A stretch of 64,000 nucleotides of DNA from the NCBI GenBank assembly GCA_038087875.1, contig CM075981.1, positions 2,542,001-2,606,000 on the forward strand, written 5' to 3'. The translations under genes and the position numbers were made by a program. The number at the start of each line of letters is the position of its first letter. Position 1 is the stretch's first letter. Below the pieces are notes generated by a model. That model searched no databases. It was given only the letters and a program-made list of their open reading frames with translations, and was not told where the DNA came from. Origin of the DNA: Malacoraja senta. Taxonomy: Eukaryota. Of this stretch, positions 2,085 through 56,903 are shown piece by piece.

Positions 2085-2332
2085 TTAAGGCCAGTTGCAA
2101 CATTTACAGGATGAATCGAAGACTAATCCAGTGGCACAGCTCTTCAGGTAGGTCCGACCATTGGCGCACTGGTAGAACTTGTTCTTGTCCTTGGGATCGG
2201 GGAAGGTACCGTTCGCTTTGCCATTACAGAAGCCACTGCCTCCACCACTGCTGCCTCCACCGCCTCCACCACCACTAGGAGCATCAGTAGGTGGGACAGC
2301 CGGCTTCAATGTTGTCTTGGATGGGACGCAAG
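2085..2332 (-). CDS. Chitinase A exon 11 (hinge + CBM14, stop)
   Basis: ACVPSKTTLKPAVPPTDAPSGGGG...FCNGKANGTFPDPKDKNKFYQCANGRTYLKSCATGLVFDSSCKCCNWP*. Confidence 0.95.
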
Positions 2333-11300: not shown

Positions 11301-12319
11301 GCTATGCTTACTATTCTAGTATAAATTTGATTGTTCTGTTTCTGGTACATATGACAATAACACACCCTTAACTCCCTCTCCCTGTGACCAAGTGGGTTTT
11401 CTCCAGGAGCTCTGGTTTCCTCCCAAATCCCAAAGATGTGAGGGATTGAAGGTTAATTATCCCTCTGTAAAATTGCCCCTAGTGTGCAGGGAGTGGATGC
11501 ATACGTGGGATAACATTGAACTAGTCTGAAAGGCTGAACAAAGGTCAGCGTGGACTCCGTGGGCCGAAGGGCCTTGTTTCCATACTGTATCTCTAAACTA
11601 AACCTTTCCTATCCATGTACCCGTCCAAATGTATTTTAAATGTTGTTATTATACTTGCCTCATCTACCTCCTCTGGCAGATCGTAGCATATACTCACCAC
11701 CCTCTGGGCAACAGGTTAGTCATAGAGTCACACAGTGCAGAAACAGGCCATTTGGCCCAATTTGTCCATGCTGACCAAGATGCCCCACCTAAGCTTGTCC
11801 CAGTTGCCCCTGGATTCACCTTTAAATGTTTCCCTCTCACCTTAAGTCAATGCCCTGTAGTTTTAGACTCCCCTTCCCTGGAGAAAGGCAGAGACCATCC
11901 TTCATATCTCTGCCCCTCGTGATTTTCTAAATGTCTCTGAAGATTTTCATAGACTGCTGGAGTAATTCAGCGGGTCGGGCAACTTCTCCAGAGAGAAGGA
12001 ATGGGTGGTGTTTCGGGGAAGGGGGTCCGTTGGAAAATACAAAATATTAAGAAACTACGAACTGCAGAAGTTGATTTACACCAAAGATAGACACAAAGTG
12101 CTGGAGTATCGCAGCGGGTCAGGCAGCATCTCCGGAGATAAAGGTCAGGTAGAATTGAGACCTTTCTTCAGACACCTTTATAATAAAACTTGAGAAACAA
12201 TCTAAGCTGTTCTCATCCTCATGTAATGTCTAAACTTGATTCTTTCAAAAAGTATTCCAATATCAAAAGGAATTAAACAGCAAAAGGCTCTTACCTGTTC
12301 CAAGAAGTAGCTTTGCCAT
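2085..12319 (-). CDS. chia: Acidic mammalian chitinase-like GH18 chitinase with CBM14, copy A; 11 coding exons, 1419 nt, 472 aa
   Basis: All introns GT-AG. Exon sizes 25/30/202/57/166/125/127/183/117/139/248 follow the vertebrate CHIA layout. Signal peptide MAKLLLGTAVVLLACLQLGSA, FDGLDIDWEYP, MTYD, VWDLALDD, Gly-rich hinge, 6-Cys CBM14. CHIA versus CHIT1 orthology not formally tested. Confidence 0.93.
2874..3012 (-). CDS. Chitinase A exon 10
   Basis: VEWLKKNNFGGAMVWDLALDDFSGAFCHQGPYPLINTLHSGLGISG; AG/GT. Confidence 0.95.
3531..3647 (-). CDS. Chitinase A exon 9
   Basis: ICGFLNGATSEWNAPQDTPYAFKNGIWIGYDNIKSFGDK; AG/GT. Confidence 0.95.
4220..4402 (-). CDS. Chitinase A exon 8
   Basis: EYAMNYWKSKGAPVDKLNVGFPTYGHTF...GFLAYYE; AG/GT. 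Confidence 0.95.
4435..5005 (-). mobile_element. Rex1/Babar-like LINE 3' fragment (paralogous copy at 44445-44955)
   Basis: ORF 4658-4921 ...[39 protein letters not shown] resembles the DUF1891-type C-terminus. Confidence 0.7.
5093..5219 (-). CDS. Chitinase A exon 7
   Basis: IVDFFNVMTYDFYGPWSHVTGENSPLY...HFNV; AG/GT. Confidence 0.95.
6128..6252 (-). CDS. Chitinase A exon 6
   Basis: ELMAAFEAEGKSTGKPRLLLSAAVAGGMSNIDTGYEVPQLG (translated by hand); AG/GT. Confidence 0.95.
6869..7034 (-). CDS. Chitinase A exon 5 (catalytic DxxDxDxE intact, 6929-6952)
   Basis: FTAMVGSSGTRQIFIKSVIAFLRGYSFDGLDIDWEYPGSRGSPPVDKHLYTVLAQ. Confidence 0.97.
7731..8613 (-). mobile_element. Degenerate hAT-like DNA transposon remnant, present in copy A only
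   Basis: Absent at the homologous site in B (51660); flanked by a duplicated ATTAC; frameshifted FWYAPVTSAEVER/LKHILSDRRHSLTPDNL resembles the hAT dimerisation region. Confidence 0.6.
8891..8947 (-). CDS. Chitinase A exon 4
   Basis: NSNLKTLLSIGGWNFGTQ, 57 nt; AG/GT. Confidence 0.95.
10294..10581. mobile_element. PIF/Harbinger-type MITE (288 bp)
   Basis: TIRs AGCCCCTGTCCCACTTTCCCGAG / CTCGGGAAAGTGGGACAGAGACT, TTA target duplication; empty site in copy B near 52663. Confidence 0.85.
10606..10807 (-). CDS. Chitinase A exon 3
   Basis: SAYRLVCYFTNWAQYRPGEGKYMPQSVDPCLCTHIIYAFAGMKSNE..., 202 nt. Confidence 0.96.
10902..10931 (-). CDS. Chitinase A exon 2 (signal peptide)
   Basis: ttccag|CGGTGGTCTTACTGGCCTGCCTGCAACTGG|gtgagt, 30 nt, AVVLLACLQLG. 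Confidence 0.9.
12295..12319 (-). CDS. Chitinase A exon 1 coding part
   Basis: ATGGCAAAGCTACTTCTTGGAACAG|gtaaga, MAKLLLGT. Confidence 0.9.
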
Positions 12320-12354
12320 CTTGTTACTGTTGCTGACTGGACCTGAGCTGCCTC

Positions 12355-34509: not shown

Positions 34510-34729
34510 CAGCTCCAGAGTCTCCACACAGGGTGTCGGGGCCGGTCTTGTTCATATCTCCTGCCATCGCTCGCTCCTTTTATACCTACTCCCGGCTTCT
34601 CCTGACCCTCATTTCCTGCGTCACGTACTTTCAACCAATCATTGCCTCCCACGGAGCATTGGCCGGAGTCAGCCGCGACCTCTCCACCCTCTGCCAAACG
34701 TGTCCTTGCATCAGCCGTTAACGTTTAAC
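34510..34729 (-). promoter_or_regulatory. V-domain gene copy 3 promoter and non-coding exon 1
   Basis: TATAAAA 34578-34584, CCAAT-N9-CCACG 34635-34653, HNF1-like 34717-34729, donor at 34509. Confidence 0.65.
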
Positions 34730-36609
34730 AAGAGCAACGTCATCCCAGCTGCCGGCGGACAACCAGGCGCTCCATGATGCAATGACACGTTTAGCAGAGG
34801 GTGGAGAGGTCGCGGCTGACTCCAGCCAATATGTGGGGCACGTTGTCAACTGTTGGGACATCTTTGATGACCACAATCTCGTTAGTAATTAACGGCAGCT
34901 GACTAGCAACCACACAGAGACAAGTCTGGGCACCACTCTGTGAACGACAATGTTTGCTTGACACCAGTTTGTATTGGGGTGGCACAGTGGTAGCATAGCG
35001 GTAGAGTTACTTCCTCACAGTGCCAGAGACCCGGGTTCGATCCTGACTACGGGTGCTGACTACCCGTGACAATGGCCAGACAACGGCCAGACAACGGTCA
35101 TTCTTCACCTGATTAAATTGTAATGTTTCATTCTTAATTGTTAACTGTATATCGTGTTGTAACTTGGGAGCAAAGCACCGAGGGACTTCTTGTATGTATA
35201 CATACTTGGCTAATAACATTTATTCAAATCATTTCATAGCAACTGAAATTGCTGACTTTAATTGATAAACTGTTTATCAGGATGAGAGGAATTTTGAAGG
35301 AAGAGAGGAGGACCCCATTGAAACACCGAATAGTGAAAGGCCTGGATAGAGTGGATGTGGACAGGATGTTTCCATTATTTAAGGAGTCTAGGACCAGAGG
35401 GCACAGCCACAGAATAAAAGGAAGTACCTTTAGGAAAATAGATGGAGGAATTTGCTTAGTCAGACGGTGGTGAATCTTTGGAATTCATTCCCACAGACGG
35501 CCGTGGAGGCCAAGTCATTGGGTATTTTTAAGTGGAGATTGACAGATTCTTGATTAGTACGGGTGTCAGAGGTTATGGGGAGAAGGCAGGAGAATGGGGT
35601 TGAGAGGGAGAGATAGATCAGCCATGATTGAATGGCAGAGTAGACTTGATGGCGCAAATGGCCTAATTCTGCTCCTGGAACTGTTGCACATGAACAGACA
35701 CAAAGTACGCTGTTATATGCTTGAAATTATGACTTTATTTTATTGTTTTAACAGCAACAATTATCTTTGTGATGGACAATCGGTGGTGGAAGTTCCGAGT
35801 TGTTTGTCGAGCGCAGTCTGCAACAGAAAGATCATCTTAGATTTCTCACAACCAGGAAGGATGTCTACACATCAGATCAAAAACAATATCTAAAGTACGT
35901 CTTTATTTTAAAGTTTCTAGTTTAGTTTGGTTTATTATTGTCACGTGTACCGACGTGCAATGAAAAGTTTTTTTGTTTGCGTGCTATCCTGTCAGCGGAA
36001 AGACTACACATGATTACAATTGAGCCGCCCACAGTGTACAGATACAGGATGAAAGGGTTAACGTTCTGTGCGAGGTGAAGTCCGATCAGAGATAGTCCAA
36101 AGAGTGATGGGGCTACACAGCAGGGAGACAGGCTGTTCAGTGCATACCTGACCCTCACTCATTTCCCCAACATTCCCATCAGTTCTCCCCAGATTTCAAC
36201 CCTCACCTACACAATTTACAGCGGGCCTGTCAACCTACAAACCTGCACGACTTTGGGATGTGGGAGGAAACCGGAGCTCGTGGAGAAAAACCCACGCGGT
36301 CATGGGGAGAACGTGCAAACTCCGTCACCCAGAGAGTTGTGAATCTGTGGAATTCTCTGCCACAGAAGGCAGTGGAGGCCAATTCACTGGATGCTTTCAA
36401 GAGAGAGTTGGATATAGCTCTTAGGGCCAGGGGTGCAGTGCTGCCGGAGGGCACCCCGTAAAAAAAACACCAAAATAATGCGGAATTTTAATGAGCAGGT
36501 GTGTGGTCTGATTAAAAGAGGGGGAAGGGGAAGACCCTTCACTACTGATGGGTCTTCCCTATAGAAGGGAGGGGGGGGGGGCACTAGGACCCAGCAGTCA
36601 TCACTGCAA

Positions 36610-39855: not shown

Positions 39856-40094
39856 CTAAGACCAGCTGCAACATTTACAGGATGAATCAAAGACTAATCC
39901 TGTGGCACAGTCCTTCAGGAAGGCCTGTCCACCAGCACACACGTAGAGCTTGCTCTTGTCCTTTGGATCGGGGTAGTTACCATCCGCTTTGCCCTTACAG
40001 AAATCACTGTCTCCACCGCCACTGTCTCCACCACCACTAGGAGCATCAGTAGGTGGGACCGTCGGCTTCAATGTTGTCTTGGATGGGACGCAAG
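39856..40094 (-). pseudogene. Chitinase B exon 11 (CBM14 intact)
   Basis: FCKGKADGNYPDPKDKSKLYVCAGGQAFLKDCATGLVFDSSCKCCSWS*. Confidence 0.9.
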
Positions 40095-40649
40095 CTGCAA
40101 AGAAACACAGTTCGTTATAAGTTCATCAGTTCTCCTCAATTCATAGGAGAATTAGGCGATTTGGCCAATTGACTTTTCCACTATTCAATCATGGTTGGTC
40201 TATCACTCCCTCTCAACCCCATTCTCCTGCCTTCTCCCCATACACTCTGACACCCGAACTAATCTTGAATCTGTCAATCTCTGGCTTAGAAATACCCATT
40301 GACTTGGCCTCCACATCCGTCTTAGTTCATGTAGAAACAAGGAACCGCAGATGCAGGTCTACAAAGTGTGAATATCCCAGTCAATGGGATTATCCCACTG
40401 AACTCCCCCTCTCACCAACTCCAGAGAGGTCCTGACCTCCCATCTACCCCAGATGCTGGTCTATAAAAAGAGACACAATGTGCTGGAGTAACTCAGTTGC
40501 TTGTTCCCTATGCCCACCACGCTCTGTGTGGAAAACGTTGCTATCATACCTAGTCCTACCACTATCTGCCTCCACCACCACCCCCGGTAACGTGTTCCAG
40601 GCACCCACCACCCTCTGTGTGAAAGACTTGTCCCGCACATCTCCATTAC

Positions 40650-40788
40650 CTCCAGAGATGCCAAGGCCAGAGTGCAGAGTCTTGATGAGAGGGTAGGGTC
40701 CCTGGTGACAGAAGGCACCAGAGAAGTCATCCAGAGCCAGATCCCAGACCATAGCTCCTCCAAAGTTGTTGTTCTTCAGCCACTCAAC
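40650..40788 (-). pseudogene. Chitinase B exon 10
   Basis: VEWLKNNNFGGAMVWDLALDD...; AG/GT. Confidence 0.9.
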
Positions 40789-41049
40789 CTGGAAGACACA
40801 GTTCACATCTTTACACCAGCATCCCTCAGTCGATAATGGCTTCTACGATGCGCCGTAGAAAGCTTTTTATCGGGATTCATCACAGCACAGCATAAAGAAC
40901 TTGTTTGAGCTGCATAACGAAGCATGATCATCCCTTAAACATCCAAGCGAAGGCACAGATCTAAGGCAAACGTAACTTTATTATTTTACAAAATTGGAAT
41001 ATTAATATATGTTCATGAGTGATAGCATTAGGCCATTCTGCCCATTGAA

Positions 41050-43290
41050 ACATAGAAAATAGGTGCAGGAGGAGGCCATTCAGCCCTTCGAGCCAGCACC
41101 GCTATTCATTGTGATCATGGCTGATCGTCCCCAATCAATAACCCGTGCCTGCCTTCTCCCCATATCCCTTGATTCCACTAGCCCCTAGAGCTCTATCTAA
41201 CTCTCTCTTAAATCCATCCAATGACTTAGCCTCCACTGCCCTCTGTGGCAGGGAATGCCACAAATTCACAACTTTCTGGGTGAAAACGTTTTTTCTCACC
41301 TCAGTCTTTAATGGCTTCCCCTTTATTCTAAGACTGTGTCCCCTGGTTCTGGACTCGCCCAATATTGGGAACATTTTTCCTGCATCTAGCTTGTCCAGTC
41401 CTTTTATAATTTTATATGTTTCTATAAGATTCCCCCTCATCCTTCTAAACTCTAGTGAATACAAGCCTAGTCTTTTCAATCTTTCCTCATATGACAGTCC
41501 CGCCATCCCAGGGATCAATCTCGTGAACCTACGCTACACTGCCTCAATCACAAGGATGTCCTTCCTCAAATTAGGAGACCAAAACTGTACACAATATTCC
41601 AGATGTGGTCTTACCAGAGCAATATACAACTGCAGAAGAACCTCTTTACTCCTATACTGAAATCCTCTTGTTATGAAGGCCAACATTCCATTAGCTTTCT
41701 TTACTGCCTGCTGTACCTGTAAGCCAACTTTCAGTGACCGGTGTACAAGGACGCCCAGGTCTCGCTGCACCCCCCCCTTACCTAACCTAACCCCATTGAG
41801 ATAATAATCTGCCCCCTTGTTTTTGTCGCCAAAGTGAATAACCTCACATTTATCTATATTATACTGCATCTGCCACTGTGGAATTCTCTCCCTCAGAGGG
41901 CAGTGGAGGCAGGTTCACTGGATGCTTTCAAGAGAGAGCTAGATAAGGCTCTTAAAAATAGCGGAGTCAGGGGATATGGGGAGAAGGCAGGGACAGGGTA
42001 CTGATTGGGGATGATCAGCCATGATCACATTGAATGGCGGTGCTGGCTCGAAGGGCCAAATGGCCTACTCCTGCACCTATTGTCTATTGTCTATTGCATC
42101 TGCCCACTCACTCAACCTGTCCAGGTCACCCTGCAACCTCCTAACATCCTCTTCACAGTTCACACTGCCACCCAGCTTTGTGTCATCCGCAAACTTGCTA
42201 GTGTTGCTCCTAATTCCCTCTTCCAAATCATTGATATATATGGTAAACAGTTGCGGCCCCAACACCGAGCCTTGCGGCACTCCACTCGCCACTGCCTGCC
42301 ATTCTGAAAAGGACCCGTTCACTCCTACTCTTTGCTTCCTGTCTGCCAACCAATTTTCTATCCATGTCAACACCCTACCCCCTAGACCATGTGCTCTAAT
42401 TTTAGTCACCAGTCTCCCGTGCGGGACCTTATCAAAGGCTTTCTGAAAGTCTAGATGCACTACATCCACTGGTACCCCTTCATCCATTTTACTTGGTACA
42501 TCCTCAAAAAATTCCAATGATTAGTCAAGCATGATTTCCCTTTCATAAATCCATCATAAATCTTGGACTAATCCTTTTACTGCTATCCAAATGCCCCATT
42601 ATTACCTCTTTAATAATTGACTCCAGCATCTTTCCCACCACCGGTCAGGCAAACTGGTCTGTAATTCCCTGTTTTCTCTCTCGCCCCTTTCTTGAAAAGT
42701 GGGATAACATTAGCTATCCTCCAATTCACAGGAACTGATCCTGAATCTATTGAACATTGCAAAATGATCACCAATGCGTCCACTATTTCTAGAGCCACCT
42801 CCCTGAGGACCCTGGGATGCAGACCATCAAGCCCAGGGGATTTATCATCCTTCAGTCCCATTAGCCTACCCAATACTATTTCTTGCCTAATGAAAATTTA
42901 TTTCAGTTCCTCTACCCCCTTAGATCCTCTGTCCTCCAGTACATCTGGGACATTGTTTGTGTCTTCCTGAGTGATGACAGATCCGAAGTACCTGTTCAAC
43001 TCTTCTGCCATTTCCTTGTTACCCATAATAATTTCATCCATGTCTGCCTTCAAGGGACCCACATTTGACTTTTTTACTCTTTTTCCCTTAACATATCTAA
43101 AGAAGCTTTTACTGTCCTTCTTTATATTCCTGGCCAGCGTACTTCATATTTTCAGCCCGTATTGCCCGTTTTGTTTCCTTCTGTTGTCCTATGAAAGTTT
43201 CCCAATCCTCTGGCTTCCGGCTACTCTTTGCTGTGTTATACATCTTTAAAAAAAGTTTTATTCTATCCCTAACTTCAAGTCTACTCCGCC
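41050..43290 (-). mobile_element. CR1 LINE fragment with a nested opposite-strand CR1 3' end (41875-42095)
   Basis: RT peptides in ORFs 41135-41518, 41534-41869, 42077-42517; GCATCTGCC duplicated at 41866 and 42096; absent from copy A intron 9. Confidence 0.88.
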
Positions 43291-43533
43291 ATTCACTAAT
43301 GGCTGATCTATCTCTACCTCCTAACCCCATTCTGCTACCTTCTCCCCTGACACCCGAACACCATGAATTTATGGTGAGCTGGAAATATTTTGCAGAATGT
43401 AACGACAAAAGATTCTAAAGATTTTGAAGCATGATTCTGGAGCTCACTGTTGGAAACTCTGCAGTAGATATTGAGATAAACGAGACCACGATGGTTCACG
43501 TGGAAAGGGTAGAACTTCTATGGTCAGATGTAC

Positions 43534-43650
43534 CTTGCCTCCAAAGCTCTTGACGTTGTCATAGCCGACCCATATTTTGTCCTTGAAGGCGTACGGGGTA
43601 TCTTGTGGGGCGTTCTATTTCTGTGTGGTACCTTTCAGGAACCCGCAGAT
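43534..43650 (-). pseudogene. Chitinase B exon 9 with premature stop
   Basis: ICGFLKGTTQK*NAPQDTPYAFKDKIWVGYDNVKSFGGK. Confidence 0.9.
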
Positions 43651-44218
43651 CTGTCCAGAGACGGAGATCTTAAGGACCAATCTTGTCGAGGTGGAAACAA
43701 ATCATGAGAGGAACCGATCAGGTAGATGCAATGTGTCTCTTGCCCAGGGTCGGGGAATCGAGAACCAGAGGACATAAGGTGAGGGAGAAAGATTTAATAG
43801 GAATGGTGCTGGCTTGAAGGGCCGAATGGTCTACTCCTTCACCTATAGTCTATTGAACCTGTGGGGAAACCATTTGACGAGGGTGGTGGGTGGAGATAGT
43901 GACAAAGGCTGGAGAGGAACAGGAGACAAAATAGTGTCAGATGCTGAGAGGAGAGGAGCAGAGAGATGTAGAGAGATGTGCAAAGAGAGGAGGAAAGAGG
44001 AGAGAGACGTGAAAAGGGAGAAACATGAAAGAGGAGAGGAGAGAACGATATATAAAGAGAGAACGGAGAATGTGGGTGGGTGATGTTTCGGGTGGAGATC
44101 CTTCCTCAGGCTCCAGCACCTTGTGTCCATGTATGTTGTGTGTGGTTATTCAGTATTGGATTGGAAGATAGCATTGAGTAAAGGGCCACGCGGTTGGATT
44201 GGTCGGTAGGTACAGTAC

Positions 44219-44401
44219 CTCATAGTAGGCCAGGAAGCTGGCTTGGCGGGTGTATTTGCCGGCTGGTCCGCCGCCTCCTGCTGGGGCACCCACGGCCGTG
44301 CTGGGCGATGTCAGTCTGAAGGTACGTCCGTAGGTGGGGAAGCCCACATTCAACTTCTCCACTGGAGCCCCCTTGCTCTTCCAGTAGTTCATGGCGTATT
44401 C
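44219..44401 (-). pseudogene. Chitinase B exon 8
   Basis: EYAMNYWKSKGAPVEKLNVGFPTYGRTF...SFLAYYE. Confidence 0.9.
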
Positions 44402-45051
44402 CTGCAGGGAGACAGTTGGCATCAAAGGACTTTCGGCTCATTTTTAACTTTAGGTTTATTATTGTCACGTGTACCGAGGCACAGTGAAAAGCTTCCAAAC
44501 AGATCAGATAATACCGTACGTAAATACAATCAAATCAAACTCAGGTACAATAGGTGGAGCAAAGGGGAAGATACAGAGTACAGAATATAGTTCTCAGCAT
44601 CGTAGCGCATCAGTTCCAGAGACAAAGTCCAACGTCCGCAATGGGGTAGAGGTAAATCAGACAGTACCCTAGCTTATAGAACAACTGTTCAGAAGCCTGA
44701 TAGCAAAGGGGAAGGAGCTGTTCCTGAGTCTGGTGGTGCGTGCTTTCAAGCTTCTGTACCTGCTGCTAGACAGGACCAGGGAGAACGAGAAATGACCGGG
44801 GTGGGACAAGCTTTGATTCTGTTGGCTGCTTTTCTGCATGAAGTCTAGATGAAGTGTAGATGGAGTCAATGGTGGGGAGTGCGGTCTGTGTGATGTCTTG
44901 GGCTCAGAGCTGGTCCCAAACCTAGTTGCAACCCCACAGTCTGCTCTCCGTGGCGTATGGAACAGTTATATGGACTTGGCGAAATGGGTTTATTAATTCG
45001 GAGAGAGGAAATGAAAAAGTTGAGCAGGATTTAGTTTTCTTGAGCACTTAC

Positions 45052-45178
45052 CACATTGAAGTAGATGTTGGCATAAACCTTGTCATTAGGCAGGGGATAG
45101 AGGGGGCTGTTCTCTCCAGTAACGTGGCTCCAGGGACCATAGAAATTGTAGGACATCACGTTGAAGAAGTCAATTACC
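45052..45178 (-). pseudogene. Chitinase B exon 7 (D213N)
   Basis: VIDFFNVMSYNFYGPWSHVTGENSPLY. Confidence 0.9.
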
Positions 45179-46534
45179 CTGCAAGAGAGGAGACCGGGGT
45201 CACCCTGATACTCCACGCACCAAATTAACATCAGAACGCAGAACAGTACAACACGTGAACAGGCCCTTCTGCCCACAATGTCCGTGCAAAACATGACGGC
45301 AAGATAAACTCATCTCCTCTGTCTGCACGTGATCCATATCCCTCCATTCCCTGCATATCCACGCGCCTATCCACAAGCCTCTTAAACACCACTATCGTAT
45401 CTGCCTCCACCACCACCCCTAGTAGCTAGTAGCTTGTTCCAGGCATCCACCACCCTCTCTGTAAAAAAAACCCATGCACATCTCCTTTAAACTTGAACAT
45501 GATGCCAAATCCATCACTTATCTACCTGCACATCACCAACATCCCTCCATGCCCGGCATGATCATGGGCCTATCTAAAGGTCTTTGAAATGCCATTTACG
45601 AATCTGTAGGAGCCATTCATGCTTAGGCTAGTTACTGTTAGCATATTTCATTATATTGTCTAGATATTTCTTGCAGAATTATGTTGTACACTAGGGGGTC
45701 GGCTTTTGATACGTAGATGGGCGAGACATACATCGGATTAGGCAAGCGAAACCACAGGGAGTGGCCAGATCGACAGGAGCGGGCAGAAGTAATATTGTTT
45801 TTTACCACTTCTGATAGTAAGAACAGAAAGCTAAAATTTGTATTAGAATAAAGTGGATCTGGTATGTTCACTTCGTTGTTATTACAACAACTTCAATAAC
45901 AAATTAATTAAACTGGAAATAACGACTGGAAGATTCGTTTTTGTTATCGACTGCGTAAAGTCGGTCACTCCTCCCTGCCTGTGCAGTAATGACAATGGAA
46001 AGGGTTGAAATTGCTATTACAGTATCTGCTTCAACCACCACCCCAACCCCAGCAGGGTCTGACTGTCTACCCTATCTATGCCTCTAGTGATTTTATAAAC
46101 TTCTTTCAAGTCTCTCCTCAACCTCTGATGTTCCAGAGGAAACAATGCAAGTTTGTCCAACCTCTCCCTGTAGCTAATCCCCTCTAATCCAGGCAGCGCT
46201 CTGGTAAATCACCTCTGCACCGTCTCCAAAGACTCCACATGCTTCCTGTAATGGAGACGACCAGACCTGCATGCAATGCTCTAAATGCCTCCTGGCTAAA
46301 GACCTACAGAGCTGCAAGTTGGCTTCCTGACTCTCACACTCAATGCCCCGACCAATGAAGGCATTGAATGCATTAGGGTTGTGGATGGATCTCAATCATC
46401 GTGCTGGAAGCTCCCACCAATGAAATTGTGGAGCCATGAAAAACTAGTTCAAATACGACGTCAAACTCGCTAAACTCCCGAGATGAAAGCCCACAGGAAA
46501 AGTTGGGTTTTTTTGCGTGTGGAAGGACACTCAC

Positions 46535-46659
46535 TTGCCGAGCTGAGGAATCTCGTAGCCAGCATCGATGTAATTCTTCCCACCAGCAACGGCAGCAGAC
46601 AGTAGCAGTCGTGGCTTTCCTGCGCTTTTCCCTTCGGCCTCGAAGGCAGCCATCAGCTC
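46535..46659 (-). pseudogene. Chitinase B exon 6
   Basis: ELMAAFEAEGKSAGKPRLLLSAAVAGGKNYIDAGYEIPQLG. Confidence 0.9.
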
Positions 46660-47310
46660 CTGTGGGTCAGAGAGATCGAGGGCTCCTTTAGCAAGAGGTC
46701 AAGTCTAGTCTTAGAAGGGCTTTTTCCCCAGAGATGCTGCCTGACCCGCTGAGTTACTCCGACACTTTGTGTCAATTTCAAGTTTAGTTTAGTTTAGTCT
46801 GGTTTGGACATGCAGCGTGGAAACAGGCCCTTCGGCCCATAGAGTCCACGCTGACCAGCGATCACCCATTCATACTAGTTCTGTCCTACAGACTAGGGAC
46901 AATTTACTGAAGCCAATTAACCTACAAACCCGCACGTCTTTAGAGTGTGTGAGGAAACCAGAGCACCCAAAGTCACGGTGTGTATGTACAAACTCCGTAC
47001 AGACAGCATCCGTGGTCAGGATCGAACCCGCGTCTCTGGCGCTGTGGGGCAGCAACTCTACTGCTGTGCCACCGTGTCAACCAAGAGCGGGGAAGAAACC
47101 TTTTAATCCCCACTCAAAATGGTGCTTGGTTCAAATTTTATTAAATTCTTAAATTCCTTTGTGTAATCTGAAAATCTGTCCTTGGTGATCTTGACAATAA
47201 GGTTACATTTATTGGATAAATTTGCAAGTCATAGAGCTATGCAGCGTGGAAACAGCCACTTTGGCCCAATCTGCCCACACCGACCAATATGTCCCATCTA
47301 CACTAGTCCC

Positions 47311-47620
47311 ACAAAGTGCTGGAGTAACTCAGCCGGTCAGGCAGCATCTCTGGAGACCATGGAAAGGTGACTTTTCAGAGTGCTGGAGTAACTCAGCGGG
47401 TCAGGCAGCATCTGTGGAGATCATGGATAGTTGACGTTTCACAGAGTGCTGGAGTAACTCAGCGGGTCAGGCAGCATCTGTGGAGAACATGGATAGGTGA
47501 TGTTTCAAAGAGTGCTGGAGTAACTCAGCGGGTCAGGCAGCATCTCTGGAGAACATGGATAGGTGATGTTTCAAAGAGTGCTGGAGTAACTCAGCGGGTC
47601 AGGCAGCATCTCTGGAGATA
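47311..47620. repeat. Five tandem units of about 65 nt from a Penelope-like tail (two units at the homologous site in A, 6685-6795)
   Basis: AGTGCTGGAGTAACTCAGCGGGTCAGGCAGCATCT repeats; similar array at 56490-56730. Confidence 0.8.
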
Positions 47621-47680
47621 AAGGATAGGTTTGGCCCATTTATTTTAACGAAACCTATAGTTAGATGTACTTGACCGCAC

Positions 47681-47846
47681 CTGAGCCAGGACAGTGTAGA
47701 GATGCTTGTCAATGTGAGGACTTCCTCGTGATCCAGGATATTGCCAGTTGATGTCCAGACCATGAAAGCCGTACTTTCTCAGGAAGGGAATAACTGACTT
47801 GATAAAGATTTTCCGAGTTCCTGATGAGGCGACCATTGCGATGAGT
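47681..47846 (-). pseudogene. Chitinase B exon 5 (HxxDxNxQ, 47741-47764)
   Basis: LIAMVASSGTRKIFIKSVIPFLRKYGFHGLDINWQYPGSRGSPHIDKHLYTVLAQ. Confidence 0.92.
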
Positions 47847-48347
47847 CTGCAGGAGGGATGAATGTGGGGAGAGGAGTTAGAAATGAAATGTGCCGGAGAC
47901 ACAAGGAACTGTAGTAACGGCCGCTGTACTCAGTGACACAGTGACTCTGCTGTTGTATCCTATCATGTACAGATCACCCAAGCCTTCGTTAAACACTCGT
48001 GGTTAAAAGTTACTCCTTTTTCCTGCTATCATCCGAAGTTTCATGTGAAATTATTCTTTCTGAAAGTTATGTTTAGTTTAGTTTAGAGATACAGCGCAGA
48101 AACGGGCCCTTCAGCCCACCCAGTATGCACCGACTAGCGATCCCCACACTCTAACACTATCCTACACACAAGGGACAATTTACATTTACATTTACAATTA
48201 ACCTACAAATTTGTACGTCTTTGGAGTGTGGGAGGAAACCGAAGATCTCTGAGAAAACCCAGGTCACGGGGAGAACGTACAAACTCCGTACAGACAGCAC
48301 CCGTAGTCAGGATCAAACCTGGGTATCTGGTGCTGTGAGCGCTGTTA

Positions 48348-51300
48348 AACCCCTGTCTCACTGTGCGAGCTGACCCATGAGGTACCCCGAGTTTAAAACA
48401 AATTTAACTCGTGGTAATCACGTACATTTAACGTAGCGGGAACGTCGGTACTCGTGGACGCAACTTAGCGAATCTTGGCGCTAACGGCAGGTGCCCGTGA
48501 AACTTGTTAACTCTTGAAAAAGTTCAAACATGTTTAAACTTTTCCACGAGTAAAATGTACTCTTGTGGTTAAAAATGGAAACATTTAAACTCGTTGTAAG
48601 AACGTAGTGGCCCGTGCGTTTACCTTAGTGACTCATGAGACTACCGTGGGAACTCTTTAACTCAGCGGGCAGGCAGCATCTCTGGAGATAAGGAATGGGT
48701 GATGGGATGACATTTCCATATTGAGGGGGAGTGTGGGGTTGGAGCAGGGAGGGAGGGGGTGGGGGTGGAGGAGAGGGTGGAGAGTGGAGGGAGAGACAGA
48801 TGGGGGTGTCTTCATTCACTAGCGGCGGGTGCCGGTCACTGAAACAGGCAGGTGAGATTTAACATCCACCTTGTGTGTGTGTCTCTCTCTCTCCCTCCCT
48901 TCCTCTCACACAGGCTGAGAGACTCTGCCTCTGTGAGTGTACGTCTCTTTCTCCCCCTCTCCCACACAGTAAGACCGAGGTAAGTCCATCTGTGTAAGTC
49001 CATCTGTGTCTCCCACATACACAGTAAAACTCCGCTTTGTGTGTATATACGTCTCCCCCCATTTCTCTCTTCCCCCCCCACCTCTCTCTTCCACCCCCAC
49101 CTCTCTCTTTCTCCCCCACACACAATAAGACCGATGTATTCTGCTTTAGTCTCTCTTCCCTCCCACACACACAGATAGACCGAGGTCCTGTGCGCTCTTT
49201 CTCTCTCCCCCACAGTCAGGCCGAAGTACACCACACTGCCTCTATCTCTCTCTCTCTGTCTCTCTCCCCCTCCTTCATACACCGTCAGGGGTCCACACTG
49301 TCTCTGTCTCTCTCTCTCCCCCCCTACACACACACAGAGACTGAGTTACACACTGCCCGTTGTGTGTGTGTGTCTGCCTCTGTCTGTCTCTCCCACACAC
49401 ACAGTTAAAGGTACTCTACGCTGCCTGTGTGTGTGTGTCTCTCTCTCTCTCTCTCTCTGTCCCACCCCCCACACCCACACACACAACCCCCACACCCACT
49501 CAGTCAGAGGAACTCCACACTGTGTGTGTGTGTGTGTGCGCCTCTGTCTCGCCCTATCACAGTCAGTGAGGTACTCCCCCCCCCCCCCCCCCCCCGCAGT
49601 CTCTCCGCGGCCTCTCCCTGGGCAGGGTGCATCTGCCTCCCTCAGCTCTGATATGGTACATAATGATAAGATTACCGCTGAAATGTTGTTAAAGGCAGCA
49701 AGTTTCACTGCACAAGTAAAGGGCCAGCTGTCCTCGCCAGAACTAATAAACAGTTATTTTGCAAGTTTAAGGGATTTAATAGTTAGTATCAGAACACAGT
49801 ATTTTACTATATGTCTCAAAATGAGAAAAAAAATCTTATAGGATATATTATTTTACAAAGACCAGGTCTCCCACCATTGACTCCATTTACACTCCACGCT
49901 GCCTCAAAACCTATATAATCAAAGACTTGTCCCATCCCGGTCATTTCTTCTTCTCCTTGCTCCCGTCCGGCGGGCAGTACAGAAGTTTGAAAGCGCCAGC
50001 CTCGGGAACAGCTTCTTCCCCTCTATTATCAGGTTTCTTTAAGGTCTTTCTATAACCGAAGGTAATGTCCGATTCACCTCTGCCTCATTACGGACATTTG
50101 GACTCTCTGTGCAACTGGTGCGGTGCAATGCTGAGAACTGTATTCTGCACTCTGTATACTGCACTTCGATTCGTACTTGAGTTTGACCATTATAATTAAG
50201 TATAATATTATTTGATCTCATAGTCATACAACACGGAAACAGCTTATTTGGTCCAATTTCTCCATGCCGAACATGGCGCCCCACATTCCAGCGTATGACC
50301 CATATCCTTCCAAACAGATTTAAAAACACAACAGTGCCTTCAATGGATTTATTTCTAAATTTAAAAAAAAAATATTCATAAAAAGATGTACAGGATATGC
50401 AATACACCAATGCCATGTGTAATTTCAAAAATAATCTTTCTCCTGAATAACATATGTATAAAACAAAAACCGTGTGAAATCTTTTCATAGATTCTCAGTG
50501 GTTAATGCCTTCGGTATTTTTCTAAAATAAACTTTACTCAGAATAAGAAATGTGCACAAATCAAAAACAGTGCAATGCATTATCAGTGTCTATACATTCA
50601 ATAGTGTCAGGACTGTTTCCATCTATATTTAAACTAAACTCTCTTGTTGCTATGTGCCCCTTGGGGTGATATCCCTACCCTTGTCTGACGGGTGTCCCCA
50701 TTTCAATATCCTGCAGCGGAAGGGCCATAGACTGTGGTCCAAATGAACTGCACGTAAATGCAATGCAGATACAAATATTCTGTGTCTGTGTCTGCCATTT
50801 CCGTCTTTATGGCTTTCATGTCACGATTGCCAGTTCAATGAGTAATTCGGCTTAATTCAGATTTTATATGCGGATGCGAATAATTTAATTATAAAGTGTA
50901 AATTCTATTAAATATGTTACAGGGAAAAACGTCCAGCAATGAAAAGACATCCCTGTATTTAAATAGCGCCCATCACAAACTCAGGAGGTTCCAACGTCTA
51001 TTACAGTAAAGGAAGTACAGTGAACGTACTTGGATAAACATAATGTTGAGCATGAATATTGTTTTGTTTAAAAACGGTGGTAACAAGGCTTGTAATTATG
51101 CAAAGGCAGACAAAAAATGCTGGAGAAACTCAGCGGGTGAGGCAGCACCTACGGAGAGAAGAGATATGCGACGTTTCGGGTCGAAACCCTTCTTCAGTCA
51201 CTGTTGCTTATTAAAACAGACCTTCATTCACGTTTGGCTCAAGAGTACCTCGGGAGAGGAACTTGATAACTCGGGAGACGAACTCGGAACATCGCAGAAA

Positions 51301-51439
51301 TGACAGTTAACGGCAAACTTGAGTCATACCCGTGGGAACTCGGTTAAACTCTTGATCATACACTTGGAATCTCGTGCACAACCACGAGTCTTTCGCTCGG
51401 GGTACCTCGTGGGTCAGCTCGCACAGTGTGACAGGGCTT
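48348..51439. mobile_element. 3.1-kb PIF/Harbinger-type non-autonomous element with internal cargo
   Basis: About 45-bp TIRs (AACCCCTGTCTCACTGTGCGAGCTGACCC / GGGTCAGCTCGCACAGTGTGACAGGGCTT), TTA/TAA flanks, splits a SINE that is intact in copy A near 7540. Confidence 0.85.
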
Positions 51440-51931
51440 TAAGGCAGCAACTTTACTGCTGTGCCACCGACTATTTCCTCCTATCAGCCGAAGTTTCATG
51501 TGAAAGGATTATTTCTGAAAACTATGTTCTTTTATTGTTTGGCAAGCAATATCCAACATTGTTCAAATTACACTTTGCAAACTGCTCTGTTTAATAATCC
51601 TCCTGAAACAGTTCACTGTAAAATAATCCCCTCAATATTTATCTCTGTGTATATCATTACCAAACACACCCACTGTTCACATCAGACACATGAAACTGCA
51701 GGTGCCGGTTTACAAAAAGAAAAGACACAAAGCGCTGGAGTAAATCAGCGAGTCAGGCAGCAGCTCTGGAGAACATGGATAGGTGACGATTCGGGTCAAG
51801 ATCCTTCTTCAGGCTGAGTTACTGAGGAGTTACTCCAGCACTTTGTGTCTTTCAATATTCATTCCATATCACAGTCAATTGGAAAATAACTTTTTAAAAT
51901 CTAATGCTAACGTAAAAAGTTTCCATCTTAC

Positions 51932-51988
51932 TTCTGTTTGCTAAAGTTCCAGCCTCCAATGGACAGCAGAGTCTTGAGGTTTGAATTC
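51932..51988 (-). pseudogene. Chitinase B exon 4
   Basis: NSNLKTLLSIGGWNFSKQ. Confidence 0.9.
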
Positions 51989-52687
51989 CTTAAAGAAATG
52001 GCCAAAATATGGCTTTAGAATGATGTTTAGAACAACAGAACATTTTTCAGAACTTCTGGATCTTCTGGGGGGTTTTCGCCCCTTTGGTACTACGTTTAGT
52101 TGAGGGGATTTGCCTCAGTCTGGATCTCAAGGGGGTCACAGAAAATGAGGTGCAAGTTCATGCAACAAGGCTTCATAAGCAATGGGCCAGTCTCACTGGG
52201 CTGAAGGGCCTATTTCCTCAATCTGTGACTGAATGATTCTGTTGGCCTGTCCAATAGCTTTCTCCTGCATATCCCCCTGGACCAAGTCACCTTTCAGACA
52301 GGGGAGGTGGATGAGATGAGAAAACCTTCAACAAATGGATGTGTAACAGGGTCATGTCAAAAACCCCGCTGACCATCGATCACCCATTCACACCAGCTCT
52401 ACTGTAATCATTTATAGTCTTTTTGCTGACTAGTTGGCACGCAACAAAAAGCTTTTTGTTGTACCATGGTACGCGTGACAATAATAAACTAAACTAAATT
52501 AACTGTGGAATATTGGTTATGGAATATGGGTTTGGGGAATATCCAATACAATAACTGGTTAGCACACAACAAAAACTTTTCACTCTACCTCAGTACAGGT
52601 GACAATGAACTAAACTGGACAATGTAAACATCACATACAATGCCCGGCATTTGAGAAACAAGGTTAGTATTTATTCAGCAACTGTAC

Positions 52688-52889
52688 TTGTTCTTCATGC
52701 TGTTGATCTCCTGGTAGAGTTTTGTGTCGTTCCATTTGACGGTGGTGATCTCATTGCTCTTCAGTCCAGCGAAGGTGTAGATGATGTGTGTGCAGAGGCA
52801 AGGGTCCACATTCTCAGGCATGTATTTACCCTCTCCTGATCTGTTCTGCGCCCAGTTGGTGAAGTAACACACCAGCCTGTAGGCAGAGC
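52688..52889 (-). pseudogene. Chitinase B exon 3
   Basis: SAYRLVCYFTNWAQNRSGEGKYMPENVDPCLCTHIIYTFAGLKSNE... Confidence 0.9.
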
Positions 52890-52926
52890 CTGGGCAAGGG
52901 AGAGACAATGCCTCTGTGGCACTCAC

Positions 52927-52962
52927 ACAAAGCAAAGCAAAGCAAGGCCAGTAAGACCACCG
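52927..52962 (-). pseudogene. Chitinase B exon 2 (original donor deleted; cryptic donor at 52926)
   Basis: Acceptor retained; 37-nt and 14-nt deletions relative to A. Confidence 0.7.
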
Positions 52963-55900
52963 CTGGAACAGAAAATAGAGCAGCGTGTTAGGATTACGAC
53001 AAACCGTAATAAATCAGGGATTACGGGAAGAAGACAGAAGAATCGGGTTGAGAGGGAAAGATAGATCAGCCATGATTGAGTGGCTAGAGTGCACTTGATG
53101 GGCCGAATGGCCTAATTCTGCTCCCATCAATTATGAATTTATGAAACCTTGGCTGTATTACGGCCTCCACACAATGACACAATATAAGTGGTTGGGAAAC
53201 TATGAAGATCTATCTTGTGGGCGGCACGGTGGAGCAGTGGTAGAGTTGCTGCCTCACAGCGCCAGAGACCCAGGTTCGATCTTGACTATGGGTGTTCAAC
53301 GTGTGTGGAATTTGTACATCAACCCTGTTATGCTTACTATTCTAGTAAGAATTTGATTGTTCTGTTTCTGGTACATATGACAATAACACACCCTTAACTC
53401 CCTCTCCCTGTGACCAAGTGGGTTTTCTCCGGGAGCTCTGGTTTCCTCCCAAATCCCAAAGATGTGAGGGATTGAAGGTTAGTTGTCCCTCTGTAAAATT
53501 GCTCCTAGTGTGTAGGGAGTGGATGCATAAGTGGGATAACATAGAACTAGTGTGAAAGGCTGAACAAAGGTCAGCGTGGACTCCGTGGGCCGAAGGGCCT
53601 TGTTTCCATACTGTATCTCTAAACTAAACCTTTCCTATCCATGTACCTGTCCAAAATTTATTTTAAATGTTATTATACTTGCCTCATCTACCTCCTCTGG
53701 CAGATCGTTCCATATAATCACCACCCTTAGGGCAACAGGTTAGAGTCATAGAGTCACACATTGCAAAAACAGGCCCTTTGGCCCAATTTGCCCATGCTGA
53801 CCAAGATGCCCCATTTAAGCTTTGTCCTCTCACCCTAAGTAACGTCTGGAGAATTCATTTTTGCTATCATAAGGGTTCGGTGAGTGCGTAAACTATAGCT
53901 CCATCACATTCCCGAGAAGTAATGGCTATCGAAGTTGGACATTGATAAGGTTCATGTTCCAGCACTCCATGAAACGTCACCCATTGCTCACCACAGATGT
54001 TGCCTGACCTACTGCGTTACTCCAGCATTTTGTGTCTATCTTCAGTTGAAGGTTGCTGGAACTCTGTCGAGATTACGTTCCTATCCATGTTCTTCAGGGA
54101 TGCTGTCCGGGATCTCAAAGGATTGCCGACGTGTCAGCTGCCTAGGAGCTGAGATATCTTGGATCGTGGGAGGAGAAATAGGCGCCCCAGTGTGAGTAGT
54201 TTTAACTGCATCGGTTTTTCCCGCTCCGCTAATCCGACGACGAATCACTCATTCGCTGACTTTGCCTGGTGTCCTGACGAGATCAATAATGTTAGTAGTC
54301 TGGAGAACAGTGGATTGGATTGGGTACGGGTGTGGGGTTTGAGTCCCTGTAGGGTTAAAGTCCCTTCCCCGTAGGGATTAGAGTCCCCGCTCGGTATTGG
54401 GGTACATTCCTACATTCCTTCCTCTGGCTTCACAATTCGCAACTCTTCAGTCCTTTTGTCTCACACCTTCTGTCTTTTCATCTCTGGGCTTTATCCAACT
54501 ATCTGCCTATCAAACACCCTCCGTAGCCTGTGTTCACCTATCACTTCCCAGCTTTGTCCCCCCCCCCACCTCTTCAAGCTTTCTGTCCCCTCCCCCTCAA
54601 CAATCAGTCTGTAGACCTGAAATTACACCTATCCATGTTCTCCAGGGATGCTGTCTGACCTGCTGTGTTACTCCAGCACATTTTAGTCTTTTTATTGTAA
54701 GCCAGAATTTGCAGGTCCTTGCTTCTATACCCAGTCTAACCAATCTCTCCTTGTAATTCAATCCTGGCAACGACCTTGTGAATCTTTCCCGCACCCTCTC
54801 TAGTTTAGTAACGCTCTTACCATAGTGCAGTGGGTACATACCCGGTGGAGATCAGTCGACATGGACTGTGAGTACAGTGACTGATCTGTGACCGATGCTA
54901 TGCTTTTCTTCGCTATATTAATCATTTTGTATTAGCCCTGCTATAGTTACAACTTTCTACAGGTCAGTCTTCAACATTGCGGAGACCTGGGGCCATTTGC
55001 CGAGGGCCGCCAGCGTTGAATCTCCGCCCGGCGCGGCCTGTGGACTTCGGGAGCCGCGGACTCTGGTAGGAGGTGGCCGCGGAGGATGTCCTCCAGTCCC
55101 GACGTTGGACTTTCATCACCCTGGCGAGCGGGCTTGAACATCGGGCCGCCCCTAGTGGCGACAGCAGGGGCTCGGGAGCCCCCCGACCACGGGAGGACAA
55201 CAGAGGAGGATGACTGAATTTTGGAGCCTTCCCTCACAGTGGGAAACTTTGATCCCGCTGTGTGGGGATGTCTGTGTTAAAAACTATCGTGTTCTGTGCT
55301 CTTTATTATTCGTATGGCTGTATGGCGACCACACATTTCACTCTACCAATTGGTACATGTGACAAATAAATGTATCTTGTATCTTATATGTTACTGGACC
55401 AAGTGCAGACCCATTGGGTCTGCTCCCCCAACGCACCCGTTCCCTACCCGTAGCCCCCACGGGAGGCATGGTCCTCCAAACCGTTCCCGAACGTAAGATT
55501 CCAGCACTCCCCTTGCCTTCCTCAGCGGTGATCTTTAAAAAAAAATCCAATTGCACTTGCCCTGCGTGTTGCAGTAGCAATTTGCCCTCCCCCTGTTAGT
55601 CTGTTCATTGTGACGTCATCAGTTGAAGATGGTCGATTAGAAATTAAAGGTATTTTGATTATTTTCAACTTTAATCAGTAATGTCGAGAAATAAAGCATA
55701 AAATGTTCAGTGAAAGTGATCTCTGCCTTGAGGGGAAAAATGTGAATCAGAATATGTAAAAATCTTGTGAAAGTTGGCATTTTTAAAGATTTAATTGCGA
55801 ATAACGTGTCAAATATAGGACGACATCCTCACTGCTGGTGGTTTTAACTTCAAAGTCTTTTGACTTTTTAAGACTTTTAATCAGAAATGTCGAGAAATAA

Positions 55901-56878
55901 AGCATGAATTGTTCAGATAATGTGATCCCCGGCCTCGACGGGAAAAATGTCAATCGGAATATGTAAAAATGTAATCCTTAGTGTGTAATCCTAGTGTGTA
56001 ATCCTAGTGTGTTTGCGTAGATGTAAAGACAACCACATATACACACACACGTACAAGATCAGAGTTTTAATAAGTACATGATTTTGTTTTTATATGGAGC
56101 ATGAGCTAAGGAAAGGGGATGTAGATCAGTCACTGCATTCATAGTCCATGTCGGGTGATTGTGGAGACCGTTCCTGGAGGAAGTTATCTGGAGCATGCGT
56201 GTAACCCGGGGCAGGCGCTCGCAGACATCTTGTTGTGTATGTATTGGAGGCTTTGTCTGTAGCGATGCATCCTCGTGGTCATTAAACTGGATTTAAAGTT
56301 AAATAACATCATTATTCTCGCAACTTCATACACCCGGTAACCCTGGGGAGGCCTCACCAACACCCTACAATTCATTGATAGTGTTGGGACTGAGGACCTG
56401 GAAAACCAGCGCACATTGGGAGCAGAAGGCGAGGACACAAGAAAGTAGGAACGTAATCTCGACAGAGTTCCAGCATCCTTCAATTGAAGATAGACACTTA
56501 ATGCTGGAGTAACGCAGTGGGTCAGGCAACATCTGTGGAGAGCAATGGGTGACGTTTCACGGAGTGCTGGAGTTACTCAACGGGTCGGGCAGCATCTGTG
56601 GAGAGAAGGAATGGACGACGTTTCACAGAGTGCTGGAGCAACTCAGCGGGTGAGGCAGTATCTGTGGAGAGAAGGAATGGACGACATTTCACAGAGTGCT
56701 GGAGTAACTCAGCGGGTCAGGCAGCATCTCCGGAGAAAAAGGTTGAGACCCTTCTTCAGACACCTTTTAAATAAAACTTGAGAAACCTGTACTCGTCATC
56801 CTTCAATTTCTAAACCCGATTCTTTCAAAAAAAAGTATTCCAATATCAAAAGGAATTAAAACAACAAAAGGCTCTTAC

Positions 56879-56903
56879 CTGTTCCAAGAAGTAGCTTTGC
56901 CAT
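56879..56903 (-). pseudogene. Chitinase B exon 1 coding part
   Basis: Identical to A exon 1, MAKLLLGT. Confidence 0.88.

What the first reader, a model, noticed from the sequence alone, without database searches (positions are those of the whole stretch)
45052..47846. Copy B lost four active-site acids: an independent chi-lectin origin in a cartilaginous fish?
Seen: FDGLDIDWE became FHGLDINWQ (D133H, D138N, E140Q) and MTYD became MSYN (D213N). Cleft tryptophans W31, W71, W99, W218 and W359, all exon frames and the 6-Cys CBM14 are kept. Established: E140 is the GH18 catalytic acid, D138 and D213 assist, and mammalian chi-lectins (Ym1, YKL-40, oviductin) arose by such changes. Inference: four acid-to-neutral hits in the active site are more than random decay would give, so B probably functioned as a chitin-binding lectin before it was disabled.
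Basis: partly seen in the sequence, partly recalled or inferred. Interest (0 to 1): 0.75.

Follow-up and report, generated by a model that had tools for sequence, protein, structure and literature searches.

The report
Dead-enzyme chitinase copy in a skate
A skate carries, beside a working stomach-type chitinase gene, an old sister copy that lost its catalytic residues but otherwise evolved like a working protein, as mammalian "chi-lectins" did; one stop codon now breaks it in this assembly.

Summary
Copy B (window 39856-56903, minus strand) is an 11-exon duplicate of the intact AMCase-like chitinase A (2085-12319). It reads FHGLDINWQ and MSYN where every other batoid copy fetched reads FDGLDIDWE and M[TS]YD.

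B keeps all splice sites, the reading frame, the cleft tryptophans and the six CBM14 cysteines. Its only break is one TAG at 43615-43617.

Plain decay does not fit. Compared with simulations that scatter B's own 106 nucleotide changes at random:
- B has too few stops (1 vs 4.4 expected).
- It avoids conserved sites (P 0.002).
- It prefers conservative and family-tolerated residues (P 0.002 and 0.0003).
- It hits 4 of 5 catalytic acids (P 0.006).

B's exons belong to an old lineage. They lie outside A + Amblyraja + Leucoraja and are as far from A as from Rhinoraja. B's introns are sister to A's. This points to concerted evolution that spared the exons.

Contigs from another organism share some B-derived letters in exons 5 and 6.

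Best reading (0.6): an independent skate chitinase-like protein, recently disabled. Chitin binding, expression and fixation of the stop are untested.

The parts
39856..56903 (-). Copy B, complete 11-exon GH18 + CBM14 gene. Exons: 56903-56879, 52962-52927, 52889-52688, 51988-51932, 47846-47681, 46659-46535, 45178-45052, 44401-44219, 43650-43534, 40788-40650, 40094-39856.
   Evidence: Exons mapped from copy A; all GT-AG; 1416 nt in frame with one internal stop. Exon pieces pass Pfam GH18 and CBM_14 cut-offs.
47681..47846 (-). B exon 5 with the catalytic motif. H133 codon 47764-47762, D136 kept 47755-47753, N138 47749-47747, Q140 47743-47741.
   Evidence: In the five-way alignment, 17-18 B-specific bases lie inside the exon, none in the 40 aligned intron bases just upstream and a few downstream. 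Contigs of X1 and X2 are identical.
45052..45178 (-). B exon 7 with MSYN. S211 codon 45153-45151, N213 codon 45147-45145.
   Evidence: At 45147 and 45153 X1 shows only the B letter at depth 4.8, while A-type contigs in X2 and X3 show C and T.
43534..43650 (-). B exon 9 with the only stop, TAG at 43617-43615, replacing W317 of EWNAPQ. It sits in a cluster reading NGATSEW -> KGTTQK*.
   Evidence: W317 is invariant in 146 vertebrate chitinases.
52927..52962 (-). B exon 2 (signal peptide), 36 nt instead of 30. A 36-nt deletion removed the old donor, and a cryptic GTGAGT donor restores the frame.
39856..40094 (-). B exon 11: Gly-rich linker with a 9-nt in-frame deletion, CBM14 with six Cys, TAG terminator.
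2085..12319 (-). Copy A, intact 472-aa AMCase-like chitinase with a canonical active site, used as reference. Exons: 12319-12295, 10931-10902, 10807-10606, 8947-8891, 7034-6869, 6252-6128, 5219-5093, 4402-4220, 3647-3531, 3012-2874, 2332-2085.
   Evidence: 95% identical to Leucoraja erinacea XP_055510981 and 92-94% to Amblyraja and Rhinoraja copies.

Best explanation
Copy B is an unprocessed tandem paralogue of the skate stomach-type (AMCase-like) chitinase. It belongs to an old, catalytically dead chitinase-like lineage of the chi-lectin type. Shown: it is GH18 + CBM14; it lacks the proton donor E140 and the assisting D138 and D213, and also D133. Its other substitutions carry marks of selection on a folded, secreted protein. 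Its exons diverged from the A-type before the window species split from Amblyraja and Leucoraja, while its introns are sister to the neighbouring copy A. Inferred: the array undergoes concerted evolution. Conversions that would have overwritten B's coding differences were removed by selection, so exons stayed apart while introns were homogenised. The protein kept the sugar-binding cleft and the CBM14, so it could bind chitin without cutting it. A recent complex mutation in exon 9 turned W317 into TAG and truncates the protein in this assembly.
For: (1) All annotated batoid copies fetched have FDGLDIDWE (FDGLDLDWE in one Hemitrygon protein) and M[TS]YD; only B differs. (2) Neutral simulation: stops 4.4 expected vs 1 (P 0.054); at least 4 of 5 acids hit, P 0.0056; hits at sites conserved at 90% or more, 31 expected vs 19, or 15 without the acids (P 0.002); mean BLOSUM62 +0.16 vs -0.34 (P 0.002); derived residue seen elsewhere in the family 49% vs 27% (P 0.0003). 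(3) No net frameshift in B's exons, although A-specific small intron indels run at about 25 per 5.4 kb, which would give roughly 6 in 1.4 kb of neutral exon. All 20 splice sites are kept. (4) With Rhinoraja as outgroup, exons give AX|BR 15, AB|XR 2, BX|AR 3 (third positions 10/1/2). Introns give 7, 15, 4 for the same patterns. B's exon distance is 9.4-9.5% to A, Amblyraja, Leucoraja and Rhinoraja alike; intron A-B is 4.9%. (5) B's exon branch has 103 changes against 38 expected from its own intron rates, silent 4-fold sites included (14/165 vs 3/165 in A), with no rise in adjacent intron. An older exon lineage explains this. (6) Contigs of organism C carry 5 of 8 B-derived letters in exon 6. 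In exon 5 they show 8 differences where A-types show 12-15. (7) B exon 5 scores next to Ym1/Chil3/Chil4, just after mouse AMCase, among solved structures.
Against: No open-frame B-type orthologue was recovered. None is annotated in Amblyraja, Leucoraja or Rhinoraja and none lies in the 30-45 kb loci read there. No RNA evidence for B: RNA runs hold only 5-7% of the sampled words, probably A-type or repeats. B's overall ratio of replacement to silent changes is about 0.9 of the neutral expectation. About a quarter of its replacements still hit conserved sites, against 10% in A-type lineages, so constraint was weak or a sizeable neutral phase followed. Y34, invariant in the family, is lost. Two of three new N-glycosylation sequons sit at conserved N-terminal positions and might obstruct the cleft. 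Intron support for A+B as sisters is modest (15:7:4). The order of the acid losses relative to the stop is unknown.
Confidence: 0.6

Rival explanations
1. Plain young pseudogene. B was duplicated from A around the time of the split from Amblyraja and Leucoraja, was never useful, and everything seen is neutral decay.
For: One premature stop. Codon positions 1/2/3 are hit 43/26/34 times, and replacement to silent is near the neutral ratio. Intron branch lengths of A and B are equal. No annotated B-type protein exists anywhere.
Against: Exon changes run at 2.7 times the intron-derived neutral expectation (P 5e-18). Conserved sites are avoided, replacements are conservative and family-tolerated, stops are few and there are no frameshifts. 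The exon genealogy places B outside A + Amblyraja + Leucoraja. B-derived letters occur in another organism.
Confidence: 0.1
2. B is still a working gene in the species. The TAG is an allele private to the sequenced individual, or an assembly error, or is tolerated.
For: It is the only lesion in 1.4 kb that otherwise looks selected. It lies in a compact multi-base cluster that looks like one recent event. The reads laid did not resolve position 43615-43617.
Against: W317 is invariant in the family, and the flanking cluster also changes neighbouring residues. Other B pieces are letter-identical in two samples, which speaks for an accurate assembly. Skipping exon 9 (117 nt, in frame) would remove a cysteine and a core strand.
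Confidence: 0.15
3. Mosaic by exon-only gene conversion. B is a recent duplicate of A whose exons were overwritten piecemeal from an unsampled, much older chitinase-like paralogue elsewhere in the genome. The copy in this window need never have worked.
For: The exon/intron boundaries of divergence are sharp. Changes are clustered: 22 adjacent pairs vs 8.9 expected. Other chitinase paralogues lie about 155-163 kb beyond the window, according to unchecked scan notes.
Against: No family member among 146 matches more than 11 of 63 B-derived residues. Eleven separate exons would all need converting without touching the introns. Clustered substitutions also occur in the introns. It still requires an old catalytically dead lineage, so the main conclusion survives.
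Confidence: 0.15

Closest known systems
Mouse Ym1/Ym2 (Chil3/Chil4), rodent chitinase-like lectins derived from AMCase
   Same: They arose by tandem duplication of an AMCase-type chitinase. The proton donor is replaced by Gln (E140Q) and one motif Asp by Asn. The cleft aromatics are kept. B exon 5 ranks them right after mouse AMCase among solved structures.
   Different: Ym1 has N136 and keeps D138 (FDGLNLDWQ); B keeps D136 and has N138, plus H133 and N213. From memory: Ym1 lacks the CBM14, which B keeps. B has a separate origin inside the skate clade. B carries a stop.
YKL-40/CHI3L1, YKL-39/CHI3L2 and oviductin (mammalian chi-lectins)
   Same: GH18 fold with the catalytic Glu and Asp replaced; products of birth-and-death evolution of the chitinase cluster (PMC1945033).
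   Different: They have other replacements (for example DGLDLAWL in CHI3L1, seen in P0282). They are old and conserved across mammals with known expression. From memory: they have no CBM14.
Skate A-type AMCase-like chitinases (window copy A; Amblyraja radiata XP_032898831/834/835; Leucoraja erinacea XP_055510981; Rhinoraja longicauda XP_078276627)
   Same: Same 11-exon structure, signal peptide, linker and CBM14. 81-83% protein identity with B. Same tandem unit of chitinase plus V-set gene.
   Different: All have the canonical active site and terminal branches about ten times shorter. Copies cluster by species, which indicates concerted evolution; B's exons do not join this.
Duplicated genes whose introns are homogenised by gene conversion while selection keeps exons apart (for example primate red/green opsins; recalled from memory, not checked here)
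   Same: Exons more diverged than introns, silent sites included, with different genealogies for the two.
   Different: Here one partner is catalytically dead and now interrupted. Conversion tracts were not mapped.

Membership tests
Glycoside hydrolase family 18 (Pfam PF00704) | Sequence match to the GH18 profile above the curated cut-off | tested here: met
   B exons 3, 5, 7 and 8 score 41.6, 43.6, 35.3 and 36.4 bits, each above the 29.6-bit cut-off.
Active GH18 chitinase | DxxDxDxE motif with the proton donor Glu (E140) and D138, plus D213 after MxY | tested here: not met
   B reads H..D.N.Q and MSYN. Loss of activity follows from the established GH18 substrate-assisted mechanism. It was not assayed.
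CBM14 / peritrophin-A chitin-binding domain (PF01607) | Six-cysteine domain matching the profile | tested here: met
   39.6 bits against a cut-off of 22.1; six Cys kept.
Chi-lectin / chitinase-like protein | GH18 protein with catalytic residues replaced but fold and cleft under selection | tested here: met
   Acids replaced; conserved sites avoided, replacements conservative and family-tolerated, cleft Trp kept.
Chi-lectin / chitinase-like protein | Made as a full-length protein (open frame, transcript) | tested here: not met
   TAG at codon 317 in this assembly. No B-specific RNA found. Fixation of the stop is not known.
Chi-lectin / chitinase-like protein | Binds chitin or chito-oligosaccharide without hydrolysis | not testable with these tools
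   Needs recombinant protein.
Unprocessed pseudogene evolving neutrally | Disabling lesion present | tested here: met
   One nonsense codon.
Unprocessed pseudogene evolving neutrally | Substitutions and indels distributed as in neutral sequence | tested here: not met

The most novel reading that the evidence does not exclude
Skates have an old family of secreted, catalytically dead chitinase-like lectins, possibly present across the group. Selection keeps them distinct from the neighbouring digestive chitinases despite concerted evolution of the array. They sit beside fast-diversifying secreted V-domain genes as a chitin and microbe recognition locus. Intact, expressed orthologues exist in other skates, and the copy in this window is a recent loss.
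Probability: 0.25. Interest if true: 0.7.

Novelty: new member of a known kind. Interest (0 to 1): 0.5.

Why it matters
Chitinase-like lectins are treated mainly as a mammalian innovation, with separate cases in insects, molluscs and plants. They are studied as immune mediators, yet their ligands remain unclear. An independent origin in a cartilaginous fish would be a natural replicate of the step from enzyme to lectin. It would come from the same AMCase-type parent and share E140Q with Ym1. It would show which changes recur and which parts of the cleft stay under selection. The disagreement between exon and intron genealogies is also a useful caution: dating such duplicates from introns or flanks alone can be badly wrong in tandem arrays.

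Tried and rejected
(1) A profile made by aligning single-exon translations to a full-length chitinase: MAFFT scattered the fragments, so it was not used. (2) Exon-level protein search with B exon 5: only 7 candidates, best 74% identity, all canonical. (4) Unfiltered five-way MAFFT intron alignment inflated B's divergence to 13% through misaligned insertions. It was replaced by BLAST-based and locally filtered columns. (5) CpG or base composition as the cause of the exon excess: rejected, since all site classes are 2.3-3 times higher. (6) Hitch-hiking of flanking intron with diverged exons: rejected, since the 0-30 nt flanks are at 1.7%. (7) A hypermutation signature: the spectrum is broadly raised, not a single class. 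(8) A donor paralogue among 146 family members: none found. (9) Gain of three N-glycosylation sequons as a signal: not significant, P 0.11. (10) Placing B by amino-acid synapomorphies: too few informative sites. (11) Looking for a B-type copy next to the Amblyraja, Leucoraja and Rhinoraja genes: none within reach of the 10-kb flanks. (12) Reads at the stop codon: not resolved, because repeats swamp that bin and the list of differences was cut.

Full report
**What is there.** The window holds two tandem copies of an 11-exon gene on the minus strand. No third copy is present.
- Copy A (2085-12319) is an intact 472-codon AMCase-like chitinase with canonical splice sites.
- Copy B (39856-56903) has the same structure. 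All acceptors and donors are kept and the frame is open except for one TAG.
- The finding's coordinates run exactly from B exon 5 to B exon 7.
- B reads FHGLDINWQ (47767-47741) and MSYNF (45156-45142). A reads FDGLDIDWE and MTYDF.
- In A's numbering the changes are D133H, D138N, E140Q and D213N. D136 is kept, as are W31, W71, W99, W218 and W359.
- The stop replaces W317 (43617-43615) inside a compact cluster of changed bases.
- A 36-nt deletion removed the donor of exon 2, and a cryptic GTGAGT donor keeps the frame.
- The linker lost 9 nt in frame, and the CBM14 keeps its six cysteines.
- Exon pieces pass the Pfam cut-offs for GH18 and CBM_14.

**Independent support for the letters.** Logan contigs of two samples of 'organism A' are letter-identical to B exon 5. 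One sample also covers exon 6 exactly and shows no other letter at the exon 7 sites listed. A-type contigs with exactly A's letters were laid as well. The position of the stop was not resolved.

**Relatives.** The window's species is not one of the annotated skates.
- A is 95% identical to Leucoraja erinacea XP_055510981. It is 91-94% identical to Amblyraja radiata and Rhinoraja longicauda copies.
- Every batoid protein fetched has the canonical motif (FDGLDLDWE in one Hemitrygon protein) and M[TS]YD. So does every copy in the loci read.
- B is 80-82% identical to all of them.
- In a protein tree B lies inside the skate clade (support 100/99). Its terminal branch is 0.19, against about 0.02 for the others.
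- Amblyraja and Rhinoraja copies cluster by species, which is the mark of concerted evolution or recent duplication.
- No B-type protein is annotated anywhere.

**Is it neutral decay?** I polarised changes with Amblyraja, Leucoraja and a Logan mRNA.
- B has 103 private changes in 1407 exon bases: 31 silent and 72 replacement, at codon positions 1/2/3 in counts of 43/26/34. A has 18.
- I scattered B's own 106 changes at random over the ancestral coding sequence, matched for type and CpG context. The results:

| Measure | Neutral expectation | Observed | P |
|---|---|---|---|
| Stop codons | 4.4 | 1 | 0.054 |
| Hits at sites conserved at 90% or more in 146 vertebrate chitinases | 31 | 19 (15 without the acids) | 0.002 |
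| Mean BLOSUM62 of replacements | -0.34 | +0.16 | 0.002 |
| Derived residue seen elsewhere in the family | 27% | 49% | 0.0003 |
| At least 4 of the 5 catalytic acids hit | - | 4 of 5 | 0.0056 |

- A-specific small intron indels occur at about 25 per 5.4 kb. Roughly six would therefore be expected in 1.4 kb of neutral exon, mostly frame-breaking. B has no net frameshift. This is a rough rate, not a formal test.
- So B's changes were filtered for a folded protein, while catalysis was given up.
- The filter was weaker than in A-type lineages. 25-30% of B's replacements fall at conserved sites, against 10% in A-type lineages and 44% under neutrality.
- This fits either weak constraint throughout or a later neutral phase.

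**An anomaly and its resolution.** B's exons carry 2.7 times the changes predicted from its own introns: 103 against 38, composition-corrected, P 5e-18.
- The excess includes clean 4-fold sites: 14/165 in B against 3/165 in A.
- Intron sequence right next to the exons is not raised, at 1.7%.
- CpG content, mutation spectrum and a donor paralogue do not explain it.
- Rooting with Rhinoraja does explain it. Here X stands for Amblyraja = Leucoraja:

| Pattern | Exons 3-11 | Exon third positions | Introns 3-10 |
|---|---|---|---|
| A=X, B=Rhinoraja (AX\|BR) | 15 | 10 | 7 |
| A=B (AB\|XR) | 2 | 1 | 15 |
| B=X (BX\|AR) | 3 | 2 | 4 |

- By hand, a chi-square on the 2x3 table of exons against introns gives about 12, P about 0.002.
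- B's exons are 9.4-9.5% from A, Amblyraja, Leucoraja and Rhinoraja alike, while A-Rhinoraja is 5.7%.
- B's introns are 4.9% from A, 5.6-6.1% from Amblyraja and Leucoraja, and 10.7% from Rhinoraja.
- Hence the exons are an old lineage, outside A + Amblyraja + Leucoraja, set in introns that are sister to A.
- The simplest cause is concerted evolution of the array with selection against conversions that overwrite B's coding differences. The alternative is exon-only conversion from an unsampled old B-type gene.
- Either way, a catalytically dead lineage has persisted for long.
- Caveat: the last exon of the Rhinoraja model was mapped 5 nt too long, which affects a handful of columns at most.

**Another organism.** Contigs of 'organism C' laid on B carry B's letter at five of eight B-derived exon 6 positions. 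These are 46551, 46563, 46572, 46574 and 46603, where all A-types differ.
- In exon 5 (47683-47803) they differ from B at 8 positions, where A-types differ at 12-15.
- In exon 8 they are mostly A-type-like.
- This points to a B-lineage orthologue with part of the derived changes.
- Its motif letters and its frame were not shown in the truncated output.

**Comparison with known systems.** Among solved structures, B exon 5 scores best to mouse AMCase and then to Ym1/Chil3 and Chil4.
- The alignment shows Ym1 as FDGLNLDWQ. E140Q is therefore shared, but the Asp to Asn change is at 136 in Ym1 and at 138 in B.
- GH18 evolution by birth and death, with chitolectins arising from chitinases, is established (PMC1945033).
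- My two literature searches found no described chondrichthyan chitinase-like lectin.

**Verdict.** The reading of a former chi-lectin, now disabled, is the best supported at about 0.6. Plain decay is disfavoured.
- Still open: chitin binding, expression, the timing of the acid losses, and whether the stop is fixed.
- I file B as a new member of a known kind. Interest is moderate, and higher if intact orthologues are found.

Noticed in passing
L004:10001-35254 (Amblyraja radiata CM021389.1): The 25-kb gene model for XP_032898831 (472 aa) spans one complete chitinase copy (exons at 10001-20147) and a second partial copy (exons 4-11 at 28241-35254). It looks like a chimeric annotation across two tandem units.
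   Followed up: partly
L001, L004, L005 (Amblyraja); L003 (Leucoraja); L006 (Rhinoraja): The chitinase genes lie in repeated units of chitinase plus V-set gene, about 18.7 kb per unit in Amblyraja. A further Amblyraja copy lies about 100 kb away in the opposite orientation. Rhinoraja has a second canonical copy 5 kb downstream.
   Followed up: partly
window 52688-52889 and 51932-51988: B gained three N-glycosylation sequons: NRS from Y34N + P36S, NDT from P->T, and NFS from G->S. Two are at positions at least 95% conserved in the family. The count is not significant against simulation (3 vs 1.2, P 0.11).
   Followed up: yes
window 47310-47630: A tandem array of about 66-bp units sits in B intron 4, with related units at 56500-56750 and in copy A (6684-6800). 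Read depth in B's introns rises to the 10^5-10^7 range, so these are high-copy repeats.
   Followed up: no
window 44059-46714 (read laying, run X2): In sample S2 the A-type contigs have about four times the depth of the B-identical contigs. They also carry a few letters that are neither A's nor B's (for example 44315, 45189, 46468, 46597). This suggests further A-type copies outside the window.
   Followed up: no
window 1-1389: A 470-N gap lies at 335-804, flanked by a long stop-free His/Thr/Pro-coding low-complexity repeat on the minus strand.
   Followed up: no
window exons and introns of A and B: Adjacent double substitutions are over-represented in B's exons (22 pairs vs 8.9 expected). They are also over-represented in the introns of both copies (11 vs 2.8 in B, 6 vs 2.6 in A). 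This hints at multi-nucleotide mutation events or small alignment slips.
   Followed up: partly
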